A stretch of 64,000 bases of DNA from the IMG/VR virus record IMGVR_UViG_3300017963_000190, positions 186,001 through 250,000 of that record; one strand, written 5' to 3'. Position numbers and translations under genes: made by a program. Under the pieces are notes generated by a model that saw nothing but the letters and a program-made list of their open reading frames with translations, was not told the DNA's origin and searched no databases. Of the stretch, positions 15,145 through 25,539 are shown in pieces; the first letter of the stretch is position 1; the number at the start of each line of letters is the position of its first letter.

Positions 15145-15960
15145 ATGTCCGGTTCTATCACAGGACGAATTGCTGCACGGTTCAGCGACAAAGTCAACCG
15201 TAGGGTCGCTAGCACTCGTAGCGGACGCTGGGATCTGAAGCTGGCCGACTACAAAGTGATCAGCGAAAAAGAGGCCCGTATTATGGTGGCCTACGCCCCT
15301 GAGATGGGCGCACCCAAGCGTAGCCAGGTGGATTCCTGGACCACGACTTCGCTCAATGGACATCTGCGGCTGTCTTTGGAGACGTTGCGTCATTACCCCG
15401 ACCTGTGTGTCGTGACTGCGGTGGTGGCCCGAAACGAGCGCCTGCGCCCCTTTAACGCGAGCCCACAGAATCCCAGCGTTCCCAAGGGAATGATCGCCGT
15501 GGCTAGCACACGCTTCATGGATGAGGAAAAAGTCATTTGGGAAGTGATGAGCAACAAGAACGGCGAGCGTTACCTCAGCCGGGCCACCAAAGATGATCTG
15601 GATGAGATTCTGCGTGAGCGCCAGACCCGCGAGCGCACTGCTTCCATCCACCATCGTCTACGCCTGGCCGATCTGGTCACCGCCGGCATCCATAACCTGG
15701 AGCCAGGGGACAAGGTGCGCTTTTCCTACGAAGGCATCTTGCAGCAAGGCGAGGTTTCCAAGGTCGGCAAGGACAACGTTACCATCAAAGCCAACGGTAC
15801 CTCCGTGACAGTGGATCGTCTGGCTGTTGTGGACGTGTACGAGAAATCTCCCAAATCGCAAGCCGAGCAGGACAAGTTCCTGAAGGATTTCTTTGAGCGC
15901 GCTTACGGTGACAAGGAGTTCGCCGACAAGCTCGTCGATACCGGCTCCGGCAAGAAATAG
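15145..15960 (+). CDS. Putative virion protein with KOW/SH3-like C-terminal domain
   Basis: AGGAGAAGG RBS; LEPGDKVRF; RVAS and RTAS sites. Confidence 0.5.
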   Translation: MSGSITGRIAARFSDKVNRRVASTRSGRWDLKLADYKVISEKEARIMVAYAPEMGAPKRSQVDSWTTTSLNGHLRLSLETLRHYPDLCVVTAVVARNERLRPFNASPQNPSVPKGMIAVASTRFMDEEKVIWEVMSNKNGERYLSRATKDDLDEILRERQTRERTASIHHRLRLADLVTAGIHNLEPGDKVRFSYEGILQQGEVSKVGKDNVTIKANGTSVTVDRLAVVDVYEKSPKSQAEQDKFLKDFFERAYGDKEFADKLVDTGSGKK

Positions 15961-15986: not shown

Positions 15987-16568
15987 ATGAAAAACCCGAA
16001 GTTTATTCGAGTGCATGGCACCCTATACCGTCGGCGTTCTGCTGAAGTTCCCACGGTCATTCGGGTGGGTGGTTACTTCTACAAGCTGTCGCAGCATAGT
16101 GAGGAGCGTGCCAAGGCTTTAGACATGATTGAGGACTTTCAGCAGGCTCTGCAGACCGCCGTCGAATCGGTTCCAGAAGGGGATCAACAGGCGGATAAGG
16201 TACGTGAGCTCTTCAAGAAGATCAACGTTTCTATGGGCAACGTGGCCGCGCGTGTAGCCAATCACGACGATGAGCAAGCCAAAGAGTTCTGGCGCCGCAC
16301 CGGAAACGTCCTGCTGCAGGCGATGCCGCTTATGAAGAGGACATTCACCGACGTTGCCGCGCGGTGGTTTGGGAACCTGGCGATCCGCCTGGACGAGACG
16401 TTGGAAGAGCTTTTCCAAGCTGTCGAGTCTGCCGAGCTAGCCAAAGAAGAGGACGCTGAGCCGGAACCGAAGAAGCAGATGCACGCCAACTTCGAGCGGC
16501 CGAAGCAACGGAAGCACCCGCCGTTCATTCAGGTTAGCGGCAACCTCTACCGACTCAAAGCTGAGTAG
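15987..16568 (+). CDS. Protein with three copies of the PxxIRxxGxxY motif
   Basis: PKFIRVHGTLY, PTVIRVGGYFY, PPFIQVSGNLY. Confidence 0.7.
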   Translation: MKNPKFIRVHGTLYRRRSAEVPTVIRVGGYFYKLSQHSEERAKALDMIEDFQQALQTAVESVPEGDQQADKVRELFKKINVSMGNVAARVANHDDEQAKEFWRRTGNVLLQAMPLMKRTFTDVAARWFGNLAIRLDETLEELFQAVESAELAKEEDAEPEPKKQMHANFERPKQRKHPPFIQVSGNLYRLKAE

Positions 16569-16571
16569 GTC

Positions 16572-17882
16572 ATGCCTGAGAAGCCGGCTGCATACCACGT
16601 GACGCTCACTGCGGTGCGTCACTATAAGCCTGGATCCGGGCCGCCAGAGAAGCCAGACATTTGGAACTTCTCTCAGATGGTTTGGTCGACCAAAGGCTAC
16701 TCTGGTGCCCTCGTGGAAATGCTCAACAAGTTCTTCGAGTGGTACCCGGATAATGGTGTTATCTTGCCCAACGGCAAGCGTGATAACGTCGTGCTCACTC
16801 CCGAAAACCGCGGACGTGCTTCTGGCTACTTAAAAGGTAAGCCGCAGCACGAGAGCGGAAACTACCGGCTGGAAAATGATGATGCGATCCTGCATGTCAA
16901 CAAAATGCGTGCATTGTCAGGAGAAACTCCGCAACGGTTGACTCCAAAGAGCGATAAGGAGTACTCCGACGCTCTGCAGAAAAACATCCAGTCCATAGAT
17001 CCCTACTACGAATCGGTGGTGCAGATGCCTTCTCCAATACGCGGAAGCAGCGAAGTCCCCAAATACATCAAGTTGAACGGGTGTCTTTACCGGCAGGCAG
17101 CCGAGCTTTTCGAGGATGCAACTCTCGAAGACAGCATTGGGGTATTCAATGAGCAAATGGAGGAGGTGACCAAGGAATTGGTCCAAATCTCCGAGATGCT
17201 TATGGATGCTGGTGAGAAGCTGCGTGAGGGCGATACAACATTTCCAGAGGTGATCCAAGAGGCAGCTGTCCGCGTGTACAAGATTCTCATGGAAGAGGTG
17301 CTTGTTGCACGAGATATGGCTCGCTCTATTAGAGCCAAAATGCCGAAGAAGCAAATGGTGGCCAAGACACTTCAGTACAAGGGCGCCACCTATGAGCTCG
17401 TTGCTCAACCTCACAAAGGAAAGCCTGATGTGAGAGAGGAGCAACAAGAAGAGTTGAGCACAGGTGAGCAGGTAGCCGATTCCCACCTTCGTGCGGTTAT
17501 CTCAGATGCGCGTGCAGTGCAAAAAAGAGCACATGAGCTTATGCACTCACTGCACAACATGGGGAAGCAGGCGCGGATTTGTATGGAGCGTGATGGGGAA
17601 ATTTCCCCTGAGCATGTTGACGTCATGCAGTCCGACAAGCGGATCGAAGAGCTGTACGCTCCGATGCGTTCCATGGAGAAATCCAACCGGCAGCTCAATT
17701 ACACCGTAGACGCCGCGATCTCTTCTATGAAGGGCGTTGTTCACCAGCTGGACGCCATGGTAGATGAGTGGCATGCTGCGCGTGATACCATGAATGCTCC
17801 AAACACTTCCCGAGAGCTCACGGAGCCGATGCTCCTTTCCGACAACCCGTCCGCGGTGTTTGATGAGCTTGGTGGTCTGTAG
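16572..17882 (+). CDS. Helical protein with two PxxIRxxGxxY-type motifs
   Basis: PKYIKLNGCLY, AKTLQYKGATY. Confidence 0.7.
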   Translation: MPEKPAAYHVTLTAVRHYKPGSGPPEKPDIWNFSQMVWSTKGYSGALVEMLNKFFEWYPDNGVILPNGKRDNVVLTPENRGRASGYLKGKPQHESGNYRLENDDAILHVNKMRALSGETPQRLTPKSDKEYSDALQKNIQSIDPYYESVVQMPSPIRGSSEVPKYIKLNGCLYRQAAELFEDATLEDSIGVFNEQMEEVTKELVQISEMLMDAGEKLREGDTTFPEVIQEAAVRVYKILMEEVLVARDMARSIRAKMPKKQMVAKTLQYKGATYELVAQPHKGKPDVREEQQEELSTGEQVADSHLRAVISDARAVQKRAHELMHSLHNMGKQARICMERDGEISPEHVDVMQSDKRIEELYAPMRSMEKSNRQLNYTVDAAISSMKGVVHQLDAMVDEWHAARDTMNAPNTSRELTEPMLLSDNPSAVFDELGGL

Positions 17883-17892
17883 GGTTACTGTG

Positions 17893-18075
17893 ATGCACAA
17901 ACAATTCACCAATCCATTTAATAGGCGTATCGAGGGTGCGATGCGTCGACGCATGGCGAAGGGTACTGAGCGGACCACCAAAGAAGATGCCATCGCAAAG
18001 CGCATCCTTGGGGACGAAATCCGCCGAAGGATTGCTGAGTATAAGGAACGGTTTGGCGAGGACCCGGATCTATAG
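17893..18075 (+). CDS. Small hypothetical protein
   Basis: Fills the gap between co-oriented genes. Confidence 0.5.
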   Translation: MHKQFTNPFNRRIEGAMRRRMAKGTERTTKEDAIAKRILGDEIRRRIAEYKERFGEDPDL

Positions 18076-18083
18076 GAGGTTCC

Positions 18084-18296
18084 ATGCGCCGTGTCAGACT
18101 GAGTAGTCGTGGGGCAATACGTCACGTGAACTATGGTCCAGGGACCGCGGGTACCGGACTAGCCCCTTCTCCGGGTCGCGTAGTGCGCATCATTCCTGGT
18201 ATTCCAGCAAACAATCGAGGCGTACGGCGCCCTTCGCATCCGGTTAACTATTTACCCTTCCATCCTTTCCGTACACATACCCCGGGCTATTACTAG
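18084..18296 (+). CDS. Small basic hypothetical protein
   Basis: AGGAGG RBS. Confidence 0.55.
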   Translation: MRRVRLSSRGAIRHVNYGPGTAGTGLAPSPGRVVRIIPGIPANNRGVRRPSHPVNYLPFHPFRTHTPGYY

Positions 18297-18298
18297 TC

Positions 18299-20521
18299 AT
18301 GCCCAAATATCTGTTCCATACGACCTCATTACCAGGGTTGCTCTCTATTATGGGCAGCCACTCTGTGCAATCAGAGGCGCCATTTGTATCTTTTTCTGAG
18401 ATACCTCATGTGGGCGACATCAGCCACAATGATGTCGTCATTGTCTTCAAGCACTCCAAACTAGCTCCGCAGCTCCTGCAGGTGGACTACACAGAAGACT
18501 GGTACAACAAGCATCCCGAACAGGCAGCCTACGTTGCTGGTGAGGGGTGGTTGGAGCAGTTCATCTATCCAGAAGAGTGCATCGACAAAGATGGGTTTGA
18601 GGACGAAGAGTGCATGGAGGAGGCGTACAAGGAGGGGGAGATTTCTTCCTTCCTATTTAAAAGCGATGAGCGTGAGTGGGTGTCTAAGGAAGAAGACCAT
18701 CCAGTAACCTTCGACCCAGAGGCGGTGGACCGGATCTTGGTGGTGGATGAACGTCAGGTGGACGCGGTGAAGGGCGCTCTGGAGGATGCCAACTTTGATC
18801 TTCCTGTGGATGTTCGGCAGGCGGGGGTACGCGTAGCATCGCCATCCCTTCCTTCTGGGGCAGGATTCCTCTTCACCGATGGTATTCGGATCCTACTCCT
18901 CAAACGCAGCATCGACAACGATGAAGCAGGCACGTGGGGTATTCCTGGCGGTGGTGTTTATAATGGCGAAACCCCACAGGATGGGGCCCTGCGTGAATGC
19001 ATGGAGGAGATTGGTTCCGTACCACCGCACAGGATTCTGGATTGGTTTGTCTTCCAGTGCGATGATCCGCACTTCGGTACCTTCGAGTACACCACTTTTC
19101 TTGCGCAGGTAGAGCCAGCTTTTGTGGAGGGGTTCCTACCTGTGCTGGATCATGAGAGCACAGGGTGGGGTTGGTACGATGAAGAGGGGGTCAAAGCGCT
19201 CACTCTGCACCCCGGCCTTGACACGTTATTTGAGCACACCACCCCATTTTTCCAGCATATTGACAACCGCACCGCGCAGACAGAAGAAGAGCTGCAGAAG
19301 CTGCCCATCGACGTGCTGGACCGCATGGCTTTTGGGGTAGTGGAGGGCGTCCAAGAACTTCCTGTAGGCGATATCAAGATCAAGTACGCTGACGACTACA
19401 ACAACGCTGTGGCAGAGATTGAAGAGGGCTTGTGGGAAGGGAACGAGTCAGCGCTGGAGGAGCCGGTAGAGGTTTCTTTGGAGCGGGGCATCTATTGGCT
19501 GGAAGACGGTCACCATCGCTATGTAATGGCTAGAGGGTTGGGACGCGATACCATTTTGGCTGATCTGTCCATCAAGGACAATCCCGTGAGAGCGCTCATG
19601 CGACGGAATGCTATCGAGGAATCTGTGCAGTTACCACGTACCATTCGTTACCAGGGAGCAACGTATCAGGCTGTCACCGCAGGCCTTAGCACCGTATTAT
19701 TGAACAGGGCTGTATCGGATGCTCAGAAGAAGCAGGAGCTGCGTCCGTACGTCGACCTGTTCATGAAGCAGTTAGGCCGAAAGGAATCCTACAAAAAGAA
19801 TGCGGATAAAATCCTGTCTGCAGTAGAGGCCCTTTTAATGGCACCCTTCGCTCCGGCTGCAGAGTCTTCGGTGCATAGCGTGAAGGAATCAGTCAAGGCT
19901 TATGATCATCTGCAAAACCAAGTGAATGCCCTAGAGGCGTCCATGGGGGACGATCCCCAAGAGGCGATCAGTAAGATACAGAAGCTATTCGACGACTTCT
20001 ACGCTGAGACGCTCCCCAAAGTCCCAGCTTGGCATAAGGCATTTGGCGAGACCGCCAAGGATTTACTTATCGAACCAGGACTGCTCCCAGCCTCCGCTCG
20101 GATGTTGTACTACCTGAAAAAGGCTTTAAAGGAAGCAGAGCGGCTCAAGCTCCTGAGTGATGAGGGAGAAGAGGTCGACAAAGATGAAGTCCGCGAAGCC
20201 TTGGATGAGATTCTGCGTGAGCCTGTTTGGGTGAAGGAAAAGCAGAAAGAAGAAGCTCGGCGTAAAAAAGAGCAAGCTCCAGCGAAAGTGCAGCAGGAGC
20301 TGGAGGGGTTGTTCCCAACAAAGGAGAAGGGAAAAGAGGCCCCGGTACCGCTAACGAAGCGGAAAGAGGAAGCACCCGTCCCGCTTGTTCGCCGTAAGAA
20401 AACTCCTCCTGAGCCAGTTCCTGCTAAACAGGAGCGCGTGCCCGAACCACAACCGGTAGCAGAGGGTGGTGGTTTCCTTAAGCTCGACCCAGCAATTGTT
20501 AGGAGGCTGGTTAATGTCTAG
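18299..20521 (+). CDS. Multidomain protein: NUDIX hydrolase + ParB/Srx-N-like domain + PxxIRxxGxxY motif
   Basis: WGIPGGG...GETPQDGALRECMEEIG Nudix box; LEDGHHR; PRTIRYQGATY. Confidence 0.8.
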   Translation: MPKYLFHTTSLPGLLSIMGSHSVQSEAPFVSFSEIPHVGDISHNDVVIVFKHSKLAPQLLQVDYTEDWYNKHPEQAAYVAGEGWLEQFIYPEECIDKDGFEDEECMEEAYKEGEISSFLFKSDEREWVSKEEDHPVTFDPEAVDRILVVDERQVDAVKGALEDANFDLPVDVRQAGVRVASPSLPSGAGFLFTDGIRILLLKRSIDNDEAGTWGIPGGGVYNGETPQDGALRECMEEIGSVPPHRILDWFVFQCDDPHFGTFEYTTFLAQVEPAFVEGFLPVLDHESTGWGWYDEEGVKALTLHPGLDTLFEHTTPFFQHIDNRTAQTEEELQKLPIDVLDRMAFGVVEGVQELPVGDIKIKYADDYNNAVAEIEEGLWEGNESALEEPVEVSLERGIYWLEDGHHRYVMARGLGRDTILADLSIKDNPVRALMRRNAIEESVQLPRTIRYQGATYQAVTAGLSTVLLNRAVSDAQKKQELRPYVDLFMKQLGRKESYKKNADKILSAVEALLMAPFAPAAESSVHSVKESVKAYDHLQNQVNALEASMGDDPQEAISKIQKLFDDFYAETLPKVPAWHKAFGETAKDLLIEPGLLPASARMLYYLKKALKEAERLKLLSDEGEEVDKDEVREALDEILREPVWVKEKQKEEARRKKEQAPAKVQQELEGLFPTKEKGKEAPVPLTKRKEEAPVPLVRRKKTPPEPVPAKQERVPEPQPVAEGGGFLKLDPAIVRRLVNV

Positions 20522-20972
20522 CCCCAAGAAAATACGATTCCGCGGCGCCATTTATGAGGCAGTTGAACTTCCCCTCGATCTCCTTCATGCTGAACTTGTT
20601 GAGGCAGCTGGTGCCGCTCCGAGAAGCAAAGAGGAATGGCAGGAATTTGCCAGCGACGTCTTCGATTTCTACAAGAATCAGCTAAGCGAAATGGGCGCCC
20701 TACGCGAGCTGGAAGATGGTATGGGTTCCTTGCGCGAGCTTCTTGCTTCTGCAAAGAAAGATTTCCGAAAAGCAAAGCACAGCAAGAACGTTCTGGACAT
20801 CTTGCAGGCGCTTGTATCCGCGCGCTACCTAGCTGGAACAACTTCACAGTCATCGAGTTTGGTTAAAGGACTAAAGTCCATAAAGAAATGGGCCAAGCAG
20901 CACGAGAAGCTCAAGAAGAAGATGGAGAAGATGCGTCAGCCCAAGCAGAAAATCAAGAAGTGGTTCAAGTAG
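20514..20972 (+). CDS. Protein with N-terminal PxxIRxxGxxY motif
   Basis: AGGAGG RBS; PKKIRFRGAIY. Confidence 0.7.
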   Translation: MSSPKKIRFRGAIYEAVELPLDLLHAELVEAAGAAPRSKEEWQEFASDVFDFYKNQLSEMGALRELEDGMGSLRELLASAKKDFRKAKHSKNVLDILQALVSARYLAGTTSQSSSLVKGLKSIKKWAKQHEKLKKKMEKMRQPKQKIKKWFK

Positions 20973-20980
20973 GTGCCGCG

Positions 20981-21610
20981 ATGTCGATGAAGAACCCCAC
21001 GAAACTGCGCTATATGGGTGCTACCTACGTGCGAGCGGATGCTTTGGACGTAGGGGAGCTGAGCTCGAAAATAGAAGAGACCAAGGATTATGGTGTGGGG
21101 GAGTCAACAATTTATCCTCCACCCGCTGCAGGTAAGAAAGAGCAGGACCGCATAGCAGCCGCGCTGGATAAGTACCCAGACATCACCAAGATGACAAACC
21201 CGGTGGTGCAGCGTATGCGCCAAGAGCTCTCGGACATGCAGCGCCTGGCTGCTGAGTCCGCGTCAATTTTGACGAAGCTGTCACGGTTTATAGCTACAGC
21301 AGAGGCCGAAGATGTGGACATGCCAAAGAATCCAGAGGAGTCCCCTTTTCGGACATTTGCTGCCTTCCCAGGGGTCATCGATGCTGTCACCTTGGGTGGG
21401 GAGCTCCCCGAATACCTGAGCGAGCTTGGGTTTGACATCAACACCCTAGCGTCCAAATCCAAGGCGCTACGTGAGCTCGGGCAGAAGGTGGCCGTAGACG
21501 CCCAGAACGCGATCACCGGCGCACTGAAGGAAACAAAGGAACCCAAAGACAAAGAGGAGACGGGTGGCCCAGAGCGCACACTTGAGATGCCGGAACCAGC
21601 AGCTGCTTGA
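20981..21610 (+). CDS. Protein with N-terminal PxxIRxxGxxY motif
   Basis: PTKLRYMGATY. Confidence 0.7.
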   Translation: MSMKNPTKLRYMGATYVRADALDVGELSSKIEETKDYGVGESTIYPPPAAGKKEQDRIAAALDKYPDITKMTNPVVQRMRQELSDMQRLAAESASILTKLSRFIATAEAEDVDMPKNPEESPFRTFAAFPGVIDAVTLGGELPEYLSELGFDINTLASKSKALRELGQKVAVDAQNAITGALKETKEPKDKEETGGPERTLEMPEPAAA

Positions 21611-21639
21611 CATTTGGCTGCTGTGATGTACAAATACTC

Positions 21640-21863
21640 CCCGAGGTTAGAAACCATGCACGAGACACGCGAACATAAGTGGATGCCGTTGGAGGCCCAA
21701 GGAGCCTCAACGCCCTCGTGTCTCCCAGGGATTGAGGTCTCCATGACCGCGAATCTGTTCAGTGGTTATGCACTCGATCCCAAAGAGCCTGGCGGCTAAC
21801 CTTGTAACCCGAGAGGATCACACGAGAAAGGCCGCCCGGCAACGAAGCTAGGCGGCCTTTTTT
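21640..21863 (+). ncRNA. Candidate structured small RNA
   Basis: TTGACA at 21607; closing stem 21642-21650/21796-21804; internal hairpins; terminator at the end. Confidence 0.45.
21827..21863 (+). terminator. Rho-independent terminator
   Basis: aaaggccgcc/ggcggccttt stem followed by a T tract. Confidence 0.85.
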
Positions 21864-22020
21864 ATTGCGCGAGCTCCCATAGACCGTAGGGACACAGGTT
21901 GGAGTTGGAGTAGCAGGTCCTACGGTTTGGGGTGAGACTAGACCCAGTTTCGGATCTCATCTGATTCTGCGGCTTTTCAATAGCAAGCTCCCGCATGCCA
22001 TCGTGGGGCCGCTCCTTTCA

Positions 22021-22040
22021 GTCTTTGACAACTGAATAGC
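22021..22040 (+). promoter_or_regulatory. rrn-type boxA-like element
   Basis: GTCTTTGACAACTGAATAGC resembles the TCTTTGAAAACTGAA leader boxA. Confidence 0.5.
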
Positions 22041-22059
22041 AAACGATGAAAACGCCTCC

Positions 22060-22116
22060 CAGGTGGGGGAGGGCAGACGTAGTCCGCGTCAATTATTACA
22101 CGTCCTCCCCCACCTG
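22060..22116. repeat. 13-bp perfect inverted repeat
   Basis: caggtgggggagg / cctcccccacctg. Confidence 0.8.
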
Positions 22117-22122
22117 ATATTT

Positions 22123-22443
22123 TTACTTGTAGAGTCCTTGCCTGCGGAGATCGTTGGCGAAGTAAGTGACAAGAGTTTGGAAGTGTCTGTAGTTGGCTTC
22201 AAGCTCGGAATTGTTTTCTTTTGAGCTCAAAGCTTCGCGGGCCACATCCGCCGCGATCTGAAAGAGATCGAAGAGCCTGATAAGCGGGGACTGGTCTATT
22301 TCTTCCTGCGGCACGTACTCAAGCAGGTCTTCTACTGCATCCTGCATGCGTTCCACACCAGCGGCCATCTGGTCTCTATCAGACGCACACCTGTACAGGT
22401 GGCCTTGCACCCTGATGAACTTAGGTGGTTGTTTCTTCTTCAT
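22123..22443 (-). CDS. Protein with N-terminal PxxIRxxGxxY motif
   Basis: PPKFIRVQGHLY. Confidence 0.7.
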   Translation of the reverse strand: MKKKQPPKFIRVQGHLYRCASDRDQMAAGVERMQDAVEDLLEYVPQEEIDQSPLIRLFDLFQIAADVAREALSSKENNSELEANYRHFQTLVTYFANDLRRQGLYK

Positions 22444-22457
22444 CACGCGCACCTTTT

Positions 22458-22799
22458 CTATTCTGGGCCGCCGGGCTGCGGAATGTATTCATGGAGAGGG
22501 TATAGACGGTCGAGGAGAGCTATCCAGCCAGTACGCTCGGTACCATATTGGACGCCATAGTAAATCTTGTCGAGCATCTCTACAAAATCCCTGAAGCGCT
22601 TTTTGTCTTCAGGTTTCTCGTAACCATACTCTTCGAGCAGCTTCACTATTTCCTGTAGAGCAGTGTGGGCTTCTGTGAGATGCTTCTCGAAGCGCTCGCG
22701 CGGCTCATAAACCGCTTTTTGGAACGCTTTTGTTTTCTCATCGTACTGAGCTTGTACGTATATGCGACCGCTGAAGCGGATCTTTTTTGGTGCGCCCAT
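22458..22799 (-). CDS. Protein with N-terminal PxxIRxxGxxY motif
   Basis: PKKIRFSGRIY. Confidence 0.7.
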   Translation of the reverse strand: MGAPKKIRFSGRIYVQAQYDEKTKAFQKAVYEPRERFEKHLTEAHTALQEIVKLLEEYGYEKPEDKKRFRDFVEMLDKIYYGVQYGTERTGWIALLDRLYPLHEYIPQPGGPE

Positions 22800-22820
22800 G
22801 TTATATACTCCGGTTTCTTA

Positions 22821-22905
22821 GGTAGCGTACCCAAGCGGCTTACGGGGCCCGCCTGCTAAGCGGGTGCACGGAAACGTGCCGTGGGTTCGAATCCCACCGC
22901 TACCT
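22821..22905 (+). tRNA. tRNA-Ser(GCT)
   Basis: Cloverleaf with variable arm; cccgc-ct-GCT-aa-gcggg. Confidence 0.9.
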
Positions 22906-23397
22906 CTACTTTGCAGCTTTAAGCATGCGATCTGCCATACCGTCAAAAGCCTTCGCCACACCCATAGCGTTCGCGTAGTCCTTCTCCAATCCAAGTCGCT
23001 TTAGGAATGGAGCAAGGGCTCTGATGTCCATAGCGATGTCTGCAGCAGCCTGCATCGCCTGCTCAGCATTCATCTGTGCTTTTTTGTACACCTTTCCGGC
23101 GATACGTACTTCATCAGAATCGTCCAGGCGCTTGTACAGAACGCCTCCCACCTTGATCTGCTTCGGAGGAGCTTCTGGCTGCACGAGCTTGTACAAGTGA
23201 CCACCCATCTTGATCTTCTTCGGAGGAGGCGTGGATGCCTTAGTTTCTTTTCCCTTGGTGGATAGAGCATCCATAGTCTTCTCGACGGTGCCCTCTGGAT
23301 CTTTGGCGGTTTCAGGATCGTCCTTCTTTTGCTTGGCTTCCCACTCTTTGACTTCTTTGCCCACTTCAGATTTCTTGTTGTCTTTTTCCTTTGCCAT
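22906..23397 (-). CDS. Protein with three tandem PxxIRxxGxxY-type motifs
   Basis: PKKIKMGGHLY, PKQIKVGGVLY, EVRIAGKVY. Confidence 0.7.
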   Translation of the reverse strand: MAKEKDNKKSEVGKEVKEWEAKQKKDDPETAKDPEGTVEKTMDALSTKGKETKASTPPPKKIKMGGHLYKLVQPEAPPKQIKVGGVLYKRLDDSDEVRIAGKVYKKAQMNAEQAMQAAADIAMDIRALAPFLKRLGLEKDYANAMGVAKAFDGMADRMLKAAK

Positions 23398-23429
23398 GAG
23401 GTGCCTCGAATATTAGTTGTGGGTGAGAA

Positions 23430-23906
23430 CTACTCACCAGGGGTTTCTTCGGTCTCGCAGAGGGATTTCAAGCTGTCCGCGAGTGTGCAGATTTGGTCGA
23501 CTGTGATTCCAGCGCCGCCCAAAACCATTTTGATTACTTCAGCAGCGTCGGGAGGTATATCGGTGGCAGCGAACTTTTCTTTCCACAGCTGCGGGTAGTC
23601 CACGCCAAACCGTGCGGCAAGCTCCTCCGCTTTTGCCCGCGTGTCTTTTAGAGGATCGCCGATAATCCCAGGCATTGGGGTTGTCTTGCTAGGCAGCGCG
23701 GACTTAGCCCTGTACACCCATTGAAGGTTTGCGTAGTCCTCTTTCTCCAGCTGCCCGTCGTCTCTTTTTCTTTCCATCGCACGGGCCAGGTTGTGCAATA
23801 GGACACCAAGCACACGCTTTTCGAGGTCGAATCTGCTAGGTTCTTGTGGATCCGCCTGTACATACAGCTGGCCTTTGTAGCGAATACGAGAAGGTGGTTT
23901 GGTCAT
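23430..23906 (-). CDS. Protein with N-terminal PxxIRxxGxxY motif
   Basis: PSRIRYKGQLY; start reassigned to ATG at 23906. Confidence 0.7.
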   Translation of the reverse strand: MTKPPSRIRYKGQLYVQADPQEPSRFDLEKRVLGVLLHNLARAMERKRDDGQLEKEDYANLQWVYRAKSALPSKTTPMPGIIGDPLKDTRAKAEELAARFGVDYPQLWKEKFAATDIPPDAAEVIKMVLGGAGITVDQICTLADSLKSLCETEETPGE

Positions 23907-23968: not shown

Positions 23969-24054
23969 GGTGAGTTGGCCGAGATGGTTTAAGGCGGTGC
24001 ACTCGAACTGCACTGTACCGAAAGGTACCAAGGGTTCGAATCCCTTACTCACCT
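23969..24054 (+). tRNA. tRNA-Ser(CGA)
   Basis: Cloverleaf; gtgca-ct-CGA-ac-tgcac. Confidence 0.9.
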
Positions 24055-24462: not shown

Positions 24463-24492
24463 TTTCCTACGCAGTCTTGTAAAATACAGGGG

Positions 24493-25539
24493 ATGCCTAT
24501 TTACGCTGGAATAGGGAGCAGGAATCCGTCTAGCAGTGTTTCTGCTTTGGCCCGAAAAGTAGCCCGATACCTCGCTGTTAGCGGGCATACCCTACGAACA
24601 GGCGCCGCAAAAGGAATCGACCAGATCATGGCCGAGGCAGCCTTGGAGGTAGGCGGCCCCGTAGATCTCTGCCTTCCATGGGATACTTTTTCGAGAGATT
24701 GGGTGCGGCGCATACGTGATCGGTTTGGATCGCTGGTCCAGCTGGAACCGTTGCTTAGTAGCGATGAAGAAGCATTCCACTCGGTACAAGCATTCCACCC
24801 AAATCCCGACGCACTGAAACGCAACGGTCTTCGGTTGCACGCCAGGAATTACCGAATTCTACATCCAATCGGAGGAGGGCTTGTACGTTGCGTGGTAGCC
24901 GCACCTCGGAATAATAGTGGCGGTACCATGCAAGGCGTACGGATCGCCGAGACATTGCAGGTACCTGTTGTGCGGTTGGACCTAGTCCCAGCTATGGACG
25001 TCAAACGTTGGTTGGACAAACGCCTTGGAATGAAGAAGCCAAAAGGTGCAACTCTGCTACAGGCACAGCGCCATGTGCAAGAAGCACTAAAACCTGGCGC
25101 CGGGGCAATTGATTGTCCCTGCTGTAAACAGCGGGTCCAGCTCTACAGGCGGCGCTTAAACAGCGAGATGGCGCGCTGGCTGATCCTTCTATCCAGGGTG
25201 TTCCTGTCTAATGGGCGTAGGTGGGTAAGCGTTAAGGATTCACCTCTTAAAGAGACCCGCGGAGGGGACTACGCCAAGCTGCAGCACTGGGGTTTAATCG
25301 AGCAGCGCCCAAACACTGATGAGAAGAAACGTACCTCAGGGTATTGGCGCCCAACTACAAAAGGGGTCAATTTCGCGAAGAACCGTACCAGGGTTCCTTC
25401 TCATATCTACATCTTCAACAACACAGTTTACGGGCAATCAGAAGAAACCGTTTCCATAGTAGACGCGCTAGGCGTGAAGTTCGACTACCGGGATGTAGTG
25501 CGCACAGCATTGAAGAGTAATACAAAGGAAAAGAAATGA
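24493..25539 (+). CDS. SLOG/DprA-SMF-like domain fused to a Zn-ribbon/winged-helix-like domain
   Basis: YAGIGSR, LRTGAAKGID, HARN, SGGT; CPCC. Confidence 0.7.
   Translation: MPIYAGIGSRNPSSSVSALARKVARYLAVSGHTLRTGAAKGIDQIMAEAALEVGGPVDLCLPWDTFSRDWVRRIRDRFGSLVQLEPLLSSDEEAFHSVQAFHPNPDALKRNGLRLHARNYRILHPIGGGLVRCVVAAPRNNSGGTMQGVRIAETLQVPVVRLDLVPAMDVKRWLDKRLGMKKPKGATLLQAQRHVQEALKPGAGAIDCPCCKQRVQLYRRRLNSEMARWLILLSRVFLSNGRRWVSVKDSPLKETRGGDYAKLQHWGLIEQRPNTDEKKRTSGYWRPTTKGVNFAKNRTRVPSHIYIFNNTVYGQSEETVSIVDALGVKFDYRDVVRTALKSNTKEKK

What the first reader, a model, noticed from the sequence alone, without database searches (positions are those of the whole stretch)
15987..23906. A shared short motif tags nine otherwise unrelated proteins: candidate capsid-packaging or sorting signal
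Seen: 14 copies of P-x-x-[IL]-[RKQ]-[VFYLMI]-x-G-x-x-Y in nine ORFs on both strands (PKFIRVHGTLY, PTVIRVGGYFY, PPFIQVSGNLY, PKYIKLNGCLY, AKTLQYKGATY, PRTIRYQGATY, PKKIRFRGAIY, PTKLRYMGATY, PKFIRVQGHLY, PKKIRFSGRIY, PKKIKMGGHLY, PKQIKVGGVLY, EVRIAGKVY, PSRIRYKGQLY). It is usually N-terminal or at domain junctions and often followed within 3-5 residues by Ala (YVQA-Q, YVRA-D, YKKA-Q, YRQA-A, YRCA-S). The DNA is divergent, so conservation is at protein level. Known: T4 internal proteins use a cleavable capsid-targeting peptide. Inference: a beta-hairpin docking tag plus prohead-protease site that loads cargo into the head.
Basis: partly seen in the sequence, partly recalled or inferred. Interest (0 to 1): 0.85.

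Follow-up and report, generated by a model that had tools for sequence, protein, structure and literature searches.

The report
Portable hairpin tag on huge-phage proteins
A 14-residue beta-hairpin motif is attached to the ends of many otherwise unrelated proteins in a clade of uncultured huge phages. It most likely acts as an address label that brings scaffold-like proteins and enzymes into the assembling phage head, as the T4 capsid-targeting sequence does.

Summary
A core pattern gives 15 six-frame hits in the window against 0.96 expected, and 13 of them lie in this 8 kb. Conservation is at protein level only. With the tags masked, the nine proteins share nothing detectable.

The motif is not private to this genome. 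I found 191 copies in 106 non-redundant proteins from related huge-phage contigs and from a search of 1.84 billion proteins. Consensus: P-x-x-I-[RK]-[VYF]-x-G-x-[LV]-Y-R-x-[AV]. It is enriched at N-termini, also occurs at C-termini and internally, and is often tandem. AlphaFold2 predicts a beta-hairpin.

The same NUDIX cargo carries it N-terminally in two relatives and internally here, so it is portable. Carriers include NUDIX, ART-PolyVal, DUF5662, HAD and sigma-factor domains.

In at least eight distinct related loci, tagged genes fill the slot between the prohead protease and the major capsid protein. Cultured relatives lack the tag.

Best reading (about 0.5): a docking tag for prohead incorporation of scaffold-like and injected proteins. 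Nothing is proven without virion proteomics. I class it as a new variant of a known kind.

The parts
15987..16568 (+). g1, 193 aa: two tandem N-terminal tags, a helical middle and a C-terminal tag (scaffold-like, multivalent)
   Evidence: Its homolog P0002 (55% identity) keeps all three tags. The g1-like families P0065 and P0066 have the same layout.
15996..16037 (+). tag g1a, PKFIRVHGTLYRRR
   Evidence: 19.3 bits
16050..16091 (+). tag g1b, PTVIRVGGYFYKLS
   Evidence: 14.4 bits
16518..16559 (+). tag g1c, PPFIQVSGNLYRLK, two residues from the stop codon
   Evidence: 14.8 bits
16572..17882 (+). g2, 436 aa, with two internal tags. Its N-terminal domain has a 47%-identical homolog in L033.
17058..17099 (+). 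tag g2a, PKYIKLNGCLYRQA
   Evidence: 15.1 bits
17361..17402 (+). tag g2b, AKTLQYKGATYELV (degenerate, lacks the Pro)
   Evidence: 8.6 bits
18299..20521 (+). g3, 740 aa: unknown N-terminal domain, NUDIX (aa 189-310), ParB-like (aa about 328-435), tag at aa 446, then a charged helical C-terminal region
   Evidence: Pfam NUDIX E 7.4e-16. The ParB-like part is 64% identical to L003. NUDIX orthologs in L006 and L007 carry the tag at the N-terminus instead.
19634..19675 (+). tag g3, PRTIRYQGATYQAV
   Evidence: 14.3 bits
20514..20972 (+). g4, 152 aa, N-terminal tag. Its start overlaps the g3 stop, with AGGAGG 8 nt upstream.
20523..20564 (+). tag g4, PKKIRFRGAIYEAV
   Evidence: 17.8 bits
20981..21610 (+). 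g5, about 209 aa, N-terminal tag
20996..21037 (+). tag g5, PTKLRYMGATYVRA
   Evidence: 13.5 bits
22123..22443 (-). g6, 106 aa: N-terminal tag followed by predicted helices
   Evidence: AlphaFold2: E9-12, E15-18, then helices H22-43, H46-51, H53-73 and H79-101; mean pLDDT 81.5, about 90 over the tag
22384..22425 (-). tag g6, PKFIRVQGHLYRCA
   Evidence: 22.8 bits, the best in the window
22458..22799 (-). g7, 113 aa, N-terminal tag
22749..22790 (-). tag g7, PKKIRFSGRIYVQA
   Evidence: 16.3 bits
22906..23397 (-). g8, 163 aa: three tandem tags spaced 16-19 residues apart, then a helical C-terminal part
   Evidence: P0112 has the same layout.
23182..23223 (-). tag g8a, PKKIKMGGHLYKLV
   Evidence: 20.1 bits
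23125..23166 (-). tag g8b, PKQIKVGGVLYKRL
   Evidence: 14.9 bits
23077..23118 (-). tag g8c, SDEVRIAGKVYKKA (degenerate)
   Evidence: 9.4 bits
23430..23906 (-). g9, 158 aa, N-terminal tag
23853..23894 (-). tag g9, PSRIRYKGQLYVQA
   Evidence: 15.2 bits
40820..41928 (+). Major-capsid-protein-like gene. It is context only, as one candidate partner of the tag.
   Evidence: phrog_2522 major head protein, E 5.6e-9. It is homologous to the gene that follows protease, tagged genes and phrog_16710 in relatives: L017 21036-22196, E 4e-22.

Best explanation
The motif is a portable docking tag of about 14 residues that folds as a beta-hairpin. Consensus: P-x-x-I-[RK]-[VYF]-x-G-x-[LV]-Y-R-x-[AV]. A clade of uncultured huge phages attaches it to many unrelated proteins so that they all bind one common phage-encoded partner.

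The most likely partner is a component of the assembling prohead: the inner face of the capsid protein, the scaffold or core, or the portal's extra C-terminal domain. On this reading, tagged proteins are incorporated as scaffold-like or core proteins and as internal cargo that is later ejected with the DNA. Proteins with tags at both ends or in tandem (g1, g8) would act as multivalent scaffolds or adaptors. Single-tag enzymes (NUDIX-ParB g3 here; ART, HD-like, HAD and sigma factor in relatives) would be passengers.

Shown: the tag exists, it is under protein-level selection, it is position-independent, it is clade-wide, it is predicted to be a hairpin, and in relatives its carriers sit in the head-gene block.

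Inferred: that it binds a partner, that the partner is in the prohead, and that the carriers end up in virions.
For: 1. Non-random and selected at protein level: 15 hits against 0.96 expected, with 37% third-position identity.
2. The carriers are otherwise unrelated.
3. Clade-wide: 56 tags in 50 non-redundant proteins from the window and related loci, nearly all on the portal strand. A profile search of 1.84 billion proteins gave 65 hits at E<=0.001, all with 2-8 copies, of which about 56 are phage-type.
4. Portable: the NUDIX cargo has the tag N-terminal in L006 and L007 but at residue 446 in g3.
5. Terminal bias across 191 tags: 76 N-terminal against 27.6 expected, and 26 C-terminal against 17.0.
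6. Hairpin: AlphaFold2 predicts it in two independent proteins.
7. Head-module synteny: in L009 the order is TerL, portal, prohead protease (phrog_18299, E 5e-51), tagged genes, virion structural protein (phrog_16710), capsid protein. The same order holds in L015, L017, L018, L019, L020, L024, L026 and L029 (L016 repeats the L009 contig).
8. In L003 the tagged enzymes start about 0.7 kb downstream of TerL and portal.
9. Specificity in the window: none of the identified replication or repair proteins (RecA, clamp loader, SbcCD-like, ligase, DprA-like) carries a tag.
10. Clade-specific: cultured relatives PaBG and GR7B have none within 20 kb either side of the portal. This fits co-evolution with a phage-encoded partner.
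11. Cargo types (ART-PolyVal, ParB-like, NUDIX, a protein with an HExxH zincin-like motif seen by eye) overlap the domains of phage polyvalent proteins argued to be injected (PMC5512222).
12. Precedent: the T4 capsid-targeting sequence is the only conserved feature of diverse internal proteins (PMC3012670).
Against: - There is no virion proteomics, no cultured member and no co-fold, so the partner is unidentified.
- In the window phage itself the tagged cluster lies next to recombination genes and a tRNA array, about 17 kb upstream of the capsid gene. No portal or protease was found in the window.
- L033 shows the same tag-plus-tRNA-Ser island without head genes on its 11.5 kb.
- Many cargo domains act on nucleic acids, and one carrier is a sigma factor. 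A non-capsid hub could explain these equally well.
- No general protease site follows the tag.
- The relatives were collected around portal genes, which biases the sample toward head genes.
Confidence: 0.5

Rival explanations
1. The tag recruits its carriers to a hub outside the capsid. Candidates are host RNA polymerase, the ribosome, tRNA or other nucleic acid, or a phage transcription or RNA-repair factory. On this reading the carriers act in the infected cell and are not packaged.
For: - The identifiable cargo acts on nucleic acids or transcription: NUDIX, ParB-like, DUF5662, HAD_SAK_1 RNA-repair, ART, and a sigma-70 region-2 protein with five tags.
- In the window and in L033 the tag island is interleaved with tRNA-Ser genes and sits next to a SLOG/DprA-like gene; L033 also encodes Thg1.
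- The tag is basic and aromatic.
Against: - In at least eight distinct loci, tagged genes occupy the protease-to-capsid slot, and a small tagged family follows the portal.
- Replication and repair proteins in the window are untagged.
- The tag is absent from cultured relatives, which argues against a conserved host target.
- The alternating hydrophobic pattern gives an amphipathic hairpin, more typical of protein docking than of nucleic-acid binding (inference).
Confidence: 0.2
2. The tags bind each other rather than a separate receptor. Hairpins from different proteins would pair by beta-sheet extension, so that all carriers co-assemble into one hetero-oligomeric body. That body could be a prohead core or an intracellular condensate.
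For: - Tandem tags are common: 35 of 85 successive pairs lie 15-25 residues apart, a spacing that could build a four-stranded sheet.
- Multi-tag proteins are numerous: about 56 phage-type cluster representatives in the library search.
- No receptor has been identified.
Against: - No structural evidence for pairing exists, because AlphaFold2 was run on monomers only.
- Many carriers have a single tag.
- This idea partly overlaps the main explanation rather than excluding it.
Confidence: 0.12
3. The motif has no shared partner. It would be a favoured structural cap, or a remnant of common ancestry in an expanded gene family, spread by duplication and recombination.
For: - The nine genes are clustered.
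- Many carriers are small helical proteins of similar size.
- BLAST alignments sometimes run past the tag, for example g3/g4 with E 4e-4 before masking.
Against: - The tag stays conserved while everything else has diverged beyond detection.
- It occurs at N-termini, C-termini and internally, and on unrelated enzyme folds.
- The same cargo carries it at different positions.
- Its distribution extends to portals only 44-48% identical.
Confidence: 0.06
4. The tag is a recognition element for proteolysis: a degron, or a substrate-recognition element for the phage prohead protease or a host protease. It would time the removal or activation of the carriers.
For: - The tags are terminal.
- A-x-E is modestly enriched after the tag, 16% against 5.6%. 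This resembles the A-X-E site of the SPN3US prohead protease (PMC10052503).
- A tagged gene lies immediately downstream of the protease gene in many loci.
Against: - Most tags lack any such site.
- Tandem and internal tags are hard to explain as degrons.
- A folded hairpin is atypical for a degron (inference).
Confidence: 0.05

Closest known systems
Phage T4 capsid-targeting sequence (CTS) of internal proteins IPI-III and Alt
   Same: A short conserved peptide is the only feature shared by otherwise diverse proteins, and it directs them into the prohead core (PMC3012670). The T4 cargo includes an ADP-ribosyltransferase that is injected with the DNA (PMC5512222). A tagged ART-PolyVal protein occurs in relative L003.
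   Different: The T4 CTS is strictly N-terminal and ends in a prohead-protease site. Here the tag is also C-terminal, internal and tandem, is predicted to be a basic beta-hairpin, and has no consistent cleavage site. No sequence relationship is evident (my own knowledge of the T4 sequence; not tested). Packaging is unproven here.
Propeptides and A-X-E processing of head and ejection proteins in giant phiKZ-like phages (SPN3US gp245)
   Same: These are giant phages with many internal head proteins, and N-terminal propeptides are proposed to target proteins into the prohead (PMC10052503). A-x-E is mildly enriched after the tag.
   Different: Those propeptides are mostly long (111-254 residues) and are not one shared short motif. 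The present clade is related to PaBG and phiRSL1-type jumbo phages by its portal (28-31% identity), not shown to be phiKZ-like. Cleavage is untested.
Encapsulin cargo-loading peptides
   Same: In concept both are short terminal peptides on unrelated enzymes that dock to the inside of an HK97-fold shell (my own knowledge).
   Different: Those peptides are usually C-terminal and have a different consensus and an extended conformation. No sequence similarity is evident. The partner here is unknown.
Polyvalent proteins of phages and conjugative elements (Iyer, Burroughs, Anand, de Souza, Aravind 2017)
   Same: The effector repertoire overlaps: ART-PolyVal, ParB-like and an HExxH zincin-like motif (the last seen by eye only). 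Those proteins are encoded next to portal and terminase and are argued to be delivered with the DNA (PMC5512222).
   Different: There, many domains are fused into one polypeptide, often anchored by MuF. Here the domains are mostly separate proteins, each carrying the short tag. No MuF domain was seen.
MucBP domain (PF06458) of Gram-positive surface proteins
   Same: It contains a look-alike hairpin, P-x-E-I-T-Y-x-G-x-x-Y-R-L-V. The tag profile picked this up in repeated copies (P0063, P0076, P0081, P0089).
   Different: In MucBP the hairpin is one part of a larger domain. None of the 49 phage-type proteins scanned in that call matches the MucBP model. I take this as a convergent hairpin signature, not homology.

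Membership tests
T4-type capsid-targeting sequence | A short conserved peptide shared by otherwise unrelated proteins of one phage | tested here: met
   14 copies in nine proteins that share nothing else. 191 copies in 106 non-redundant proteins across the clade.
T4-type capsid-targeting sequence | Strictly N-terminal and followed by a prohead-protease cleavage site | tested here: not met
   Only 76 of 191 tags are N-terminal; 26 are C-terminal and 89 internal or tandem. [SAG]-x-E follows 24% of tags against 14% background.
T4-type capsid-targeting sequence | Carriers are found in proheads or virions, and the tag is sufficient to load a foreign protein | not testable with these tools
   No cultured member was found, so no proteomics exists. 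Only synteny with head genes is available.
Phage scaffolding / prohead core proteins | Encoded between the prohead protease and the major capsid protein | tested here: met
   True for tagged genes in L009, L015, L017, L018, L019, L020, L024, L026 and L029, with L016 repeating the L009 contig. Not shown for the window phage itself, where no protease was found.
Phage scaffolding / prohead core proteins | Largely helical, with a terminal shell-binding element and multivalency | tested here: inconclusive
   g6 is predicted as a hairpin followed by helices. g1-like proteins have tags at both ends. Binding to the capsid protein is untested.
Polyvalent proteins (Iyer et al. 2017) | Two to fifteen effector domains fused in one polypeptide | tested here: not met
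   Most carriers have one recognisable domain or none. g3 (NUDIX plus ParB-like) is the main multi-domain case.
Polyvalent proteins (Iyer et al. 2017) | Effector repertoire (ART-PolyVal, ParB-like, zincin) and linkage to portal and terminase genes | tested here: met
   ART-PolyVal E 5e-8 in L003. ParB-like domains. An HExxH motif in the L003 889-aa protein, seen by eye only, with no Pfam or PHROG match. TerL and portal lie immediately upstream.
MucBP domain (PF06458) | Match to the Pfam MucBP model | tested here: not met
   Only the four Gram-positive surface proteins match. None of the 49 phage-type multi-tag proteins scanned in that call does.
Any curated protein family covering the tag | A Pfam or PHROG model aligned over the motif | tested here: not met
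   No Pfam or PHROG hit covers the tag in any of the nine proteins, nor in 38 tagged relatives.

The most novel reading that the evidence does not exclude
These huge phages run a programmable cargo-loading system. One hairpin peptide is recognised by the inside of the prohead. Multi-tag helical proteins such as g1 and g8 use it as scaffolds. Any enzyme that acquires the 14 residues, at either end, becomes a packaged and injected effector; examples are NUDIX, ADP-ribosyltransferase, HD and HAD hydrolases, and even a sigma factor. That would make it an encapsulin-like addressing scheme in a tailed phage. It would also give a sequence-only way to read out the injected arsenal of uncultured phages.
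Probability: 0.3. Interest if true: 0.85.

Novelty: new variant of a known kind. Interest (0 to 1): 0.7.

Why it matters
If the tag is a head-loading signal, three things follow.
- The internal and ejected protein complement of an entire uncultured huge-phage clade could be predicted from sequence alone. Those proteins are otherwise invisible without virion proteomics.
- It would show that a T4-style targeting logic arose with a different structural solution: a position-independent hairpin usable in tandem.
- It would offer a 14-residue handle for loading foreign proteins into large capsids.

It would also suggest that these phages inject a sigma factor and nucleotide- or RNA-directed enzymes, which bears on how they take over hosts and evade defence.

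Even if the partner is not the capsid, the tag stands as an unusually clear example of a viral short docking motif with many clients: 191 copies in 106 non-redundant proteins.

Tried and rejected
- **DNA-level repeat or regulatory element.** Rejected: synonymous positions are not conserved.
- **Known family for the tag.** Pfam and PHROGs gave nothing on the nine proteins. The ESM Atlas gave only unnamed viral clusters at scores of 0.68 or less.
- **Cultured relatives.** Megablast of the region against phage records found nothing, and tblastn of g8 found nothing. The nearest cultured portals (GR7B, NCTB, PaBG, phiRSL1; 28-31% identity) have no tags within 20 kb either side of the portal in GR7B and PaBG.
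- **Motif alignment as a locus query.** A ParB-like alignment recovered only the same three contigs.
- **g0 as the prohead protease.** The 271-aa gene upstream of g1 (15145-15960) shows no similarity to the L009 protease and has no PDB relative. The L009 protease itself has no PDB sequence relative.
- **Fold search.** Foldseek of the hairpin-plus-two-helix model against the PDB gave no match at E<=0.001.
- **Host.** The genome-contig scan found one contig, binned as a Patescibacteria MAG. It has the same length and portal coordinates as an IMG/VR phage contig, so I take it as uninformative.
- **MIX motif of type VI effectors (hRxGhhYhh).** Considered from memory and set aside: the Arg-to-Gly spacing differs by one residue, and MIX is part of a larger domain. 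Not tested.
- **AP2 'YRG' element, RRM RNP-1, GIY-YIG and SPKK motifs.** Considered from memory and set aside: each is part of a larger domain or fits only a few copies.
- **Stop-codon read-through joining g1 and g2.** They are in the same frame, one codon apart. Set aside because their homologs on the P0002 contig are in different frames.

Full report
**What the window is.** The window is part of IMG/VR contig IMGVR_UViG_3300017963_000190 (260 kb). It carries 33 tRNA genes. Upstream of the finding lie RecA-like, clamp-loader, SbcCD-like and ATP-dependent ligase genes. A major-capsid-protein-like gene sits at 40.8-41.9 kb. This is an uncultured huge phage. Megablast and tblastn against 50,697 phage records found no close relative.

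**Checking the observation.** All lie in 15996-23894 and all are in long ORFs. The eight-residue core gives 15 matches, 13 of them in the region. Residue shuffles give 0.96 +/- 0.93, with a maximum of 4. Adding the two degenerate copies makes 14 tags in nine genes:
- g1 15987-16568 (+)
- g2 16572-17882 (+)
- g3 18299-20521 (+)
- g4 20514-20972 (+)
- g5 20981-21610 (+)
- g6 22123-22443 (-)
- g7 22458-22799 (-)
- g8 22906-23397 (-)
- g9 23430-23906 (-)

Codon third positions at identical residues match only 37% of the time, so selection acts on the peptide and not on the DNA. With the tags masked, no pair of the nine proteins is detectably similar; the best E-value is 0.21. Six genes carry the tag within their first ten residues, and Shine-Dalgarno-like sequences upstream of several of those ATGs support the starts. 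No Pfam or PHROG model covers the motif. The only domain found by a family search in the nine is NUDIX in g3. g3 also has a ParB-like segment, recognised by its 62-64% identity to the ParB-like gene of L003, with only a weak PHROG hit.

**The tag is not private to this genome.**
- A related contig (L003; ParB-like domain 64% identical) carries it on five proteins: a DUF5662 protein, an 889-aa protein with an HExxH motif (seen by eye), an ART-PolyVal ADP-ribosyltransferase (MFRYRGYLYRA at the N-terminus), a HAD_SAK_1 protein (C-terminal copy) and one further ORF. All lie downstream of terminase and portal, the first about 0.7 kb from the portal.
- The single database homolog of g1 (P0002, 55% identity) keeps all three of g1's tags.
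- Using the L003 portal to collect relatives, I built a profile of the tag and scanned all frames of 26 sequences, the window plus 25 loci, some of them overlapping copies of one contig. This gave 56 tags in 50 non-redundant proteins, nearly all on the portal strand. There is a visible score gap between these hits and noise.
- The portals of these phages are as little as 44-48% identical to that of L003.
- Cultured jumbo phages with 28-31% identical portals (Vibrio GR7B, Pseudomonas PaBG) have no tag within 20 kb either side of the portal. Their best score is 4.7 bits; the copies I accepted score from about 6 to 23 bits, most of them above 8.

**Exhaustive search.** A 20-column profile of the tag was searched against 1.84 billion cluster representatives. 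It returned 65 proteins at E<=0.001, every one with two to eight copies. Single copies cannot reach significance at that database size.
- About 56 are phage-type proteins with the same consensus. They include g1-like proteins, three DUF5661 proteins, an AAA_33 protein and a sigma-70 region-2 protein carrying five tags.
- Seven are Gram-positive surface-type proteins; four were scanned and match MucBP. The repeated MucBP domain contains a look-alike hairpin (P-x-E-I-T-Y-x-G-x-x-Y-R-L-V). None of the 49 phage-type proteins scanned in that call matches the MucBP model. I take this as a convergent hairpin signature.

**Anatomy of the tag.** Pooling everything gives 191 tags in 106 non-redundant proteins. 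Residue frequencies are:
- Pro 83% at -10
- Ile 77% at -7
- Arg/Lys 81% at -6
- Val/Tyr/Phe 89% at -5
- Gly 100% at -3 (partly by construction)
- Leu/Val 70% at -1
- Tyr 93% at 0
- Arg 48% at +1
- Ala/Val 72% at +3
- then a mildly acidic stretch

Tags are enriched at N-termini (76 against 27.6 expected) and somewhat at C-termini (26 against 17.0). In 35 of 85 successive pairs they are tandem, 15-25 residues apart.

AlphaFold2 predicts a two-stranded hairpin on the tag in two cases:
- a conserved 75-80-aa family encoded just after the portal (strands 12-15 and 18-21; mean pLDDT 72.6)
- g6 of the window (strands 9-12 and 15-18; pLDDT about 90 over the tag), followed by helices

One caveat applies to the g6 model. 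Its alignment consisted of tag segments from non-homologous proteins, so only the tag region benefits from it.

**Portability.** The NUDIX domain of g3 is 41-46% identical to NUDIX proteins of L006 and L007. Those two carry the tag at the extreme N-terminus (MINFRGHQYRQL, MSLIYRGHQYCAAE). g3 carries it at residue 446, after the NUDIX and ParB-like domains. A motif that moves relative to the same cargo, and that appears at either end of unrelated folds, behaves as an autonomous module and not as part of a domain.

**Where tagged genes sit.** In L009 the gene order is:
1. terminase
2. portal
3. four untagged genes
4. head maturation protease (phrog_18299, E 5e-51)
5. a block of five genes, several of them tagged
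6. virion structural protein (phrog_16710)
7. capsid protein

The same order recurs in L015, L017, L018, L019, L020, L024, L026 and L029, and L016 repeats the L009 contig. One tagged gene starts 15-40 nt after the protease gene, and a small tagged family lies about 1.2 kb after the portal. That is the canonical position of scaffold and core genes.

In the L003, L006 and L007 sub-clade, tagged enzymes follow the portal. The window belongs to a third arrangement: the tag cluster is a two-strand island next to recombination genes and interleaved with tRNA-Ser genes, 17 kb upstream of the capsid gene. No portal or protease was detectable in the 64 kb. An independent 11.5-kb contig (L033) shows the same island type. 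It has about 12 tags on about 10 genes, four tRNA-Ser genes and a homolog of the window's SLOG/DprA-like gene.

**Interpretation.** That this is a portable peptide module maintained by selection seems secure. I put the general 'docking tag' reading at about 0.85. For the partner, the head-module synteny in relatives points to the prohead. Four further observations fit that reading:
- the scaffold-like design of the multi-tag proteins
- the absence of tags from replication proteins
- the clade specificity
- the overlap of cargo domains with phage polyvalent proteins thought to be injected (PMC5512222)

The T4 precedent is direct: diverse internal proteins share only a capsid-targeting sequence (PMC3012670). 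I put this specific reading at about 0.5, for three reasons: the window's own cluster is not in a recognisable head module, the cargo is biased toward nucleic-acid enzymes (a transcription or RNA hub is a fair rival), and no particle data exist.

A-x-E, the SPN3US-type site (PMC10052503), follows 16% of tags against 5.6% background, and [SAG]-x-E follows 24% against 14%. Most tags have none, and Ala at +3 inflates the count.

**Comparison and novelty.** The nearest known things are the T4 capsid-targeting sequence, the propeptides of phiKZ-like giant phages, encapsulin cargo-loading peptides and polyvalent proteins. The tag is not a member of any of these by sequence. It fails the T4-type criteria of strict N-terminality and a following cleavage site, and it matches no curated family. 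It works like a targeting or cargo-loading peptide but with a different structural solution: a basic amphipathic hairpin, position-independent and often tandem. It also has an unusually large client list. I rate it a new variant of a known kind, with function still to be demonstrated.

Noticed in passing
window 22821-51099, 59731-59904 and 63279-63352; L033: There are 33 tRNA genes in the 64 kb window. tRNA-Ser(gct) at 22821-22906 abuts the g8 stop, and tRNA-Ser(cga) at 23969-24054 lies just beyond g9. The independent contig L033 also interleaves four tRNA-Ser genes with about 10 tagged genes and encodes Thg1 and a SLOG/DprA-like homolog of window 24493-25539. So the 'tag island plus tRNA-Ser' arrangement is conserved.
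   Followed up: partly
P0062 (locus L032 361-1986): A sigma-70 region-2 protein (Pfam E 3e-15) carries five tags. It looks like a sigma domain fused to a g1-like module of two tags, a helical region and a C-terminal tag. Its contig is only 2 kb, so there is no context.
   Followed up: partly
P0012, P0043, P0046, P0048, P0060; L020 4376-9370; L027 5853-9404; L029 9631-13452: Several portal homologs carry intein or LAGLIDADG domains (PF14528, PF14890). The terminase large subunit (L020, L027) and the portal (L029) are interrupted by inserts of 1.4-3 kb.
   Followed up: no
L003 5215-7470 and alignment A3: Portals of the tag-bearing clade have a Gly-rich linker followed by a conserved C-terminal domain of about 150 aa. 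Cultured relatives without tags align only to residues about 62-508. This extra domain would face the capsid interior and is a candidate tag receptor.
   Followed up: no
P0063, P0076, P0081, P0089: MucBP domains of Gram-positive surface proteins contain a repeated hairpin (P-x-E-I-T-Y-x-G-x-x-Y-R-L-V) that the tag profile picks up. It is a convergent look-alike, and it counts as a false-positive class for any motif scan.
   Followed up: yes
window 16566-16574: The g1 stop (TAG) and the g2 start (ATG) are in the same reading frame, one codon apart. Read-through would fuse them. On the P0002 contig the two homologs are in different frames, so this is probably coincidence. No suppressor tRNA was found.
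   Followed up: partly
window 24479-24502 (+): A tag-like peptide (LVKYRGCLF) lies in a short stop-bounded frame just upstream of the DprA/SLOG-like gene. It may be a decayed tag.
   Followed up: no
window 18299-18840 (g3 residues 1-180); L003 17692-18500: The N-terminal domain of g3 (YLFHTTS...) and the tagged L003 ORF starting MMIKYRGCQYREA (FYHGT...) have motifs reminiscent of ADP-ribosyltransferases, but no family search supports this.
   Followed up: no
L006 20129-21356: A relative encodes a Tad6-like protein (PF25188) and a 177-aa release-factor-like protein (PCRF/RF-1 domains).
   Followed up: no
P0064, P0069, P0075, P0097: Several multi-tag proteins share a conserved Cys-containing module (PKGW...GG...C..K...D.GAFC..L.DK.EG) next to Lys-rich stretches. 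Three of the multi-tag proteins scanned also carry DUF5661; the output does not say which.
   Followed up: no
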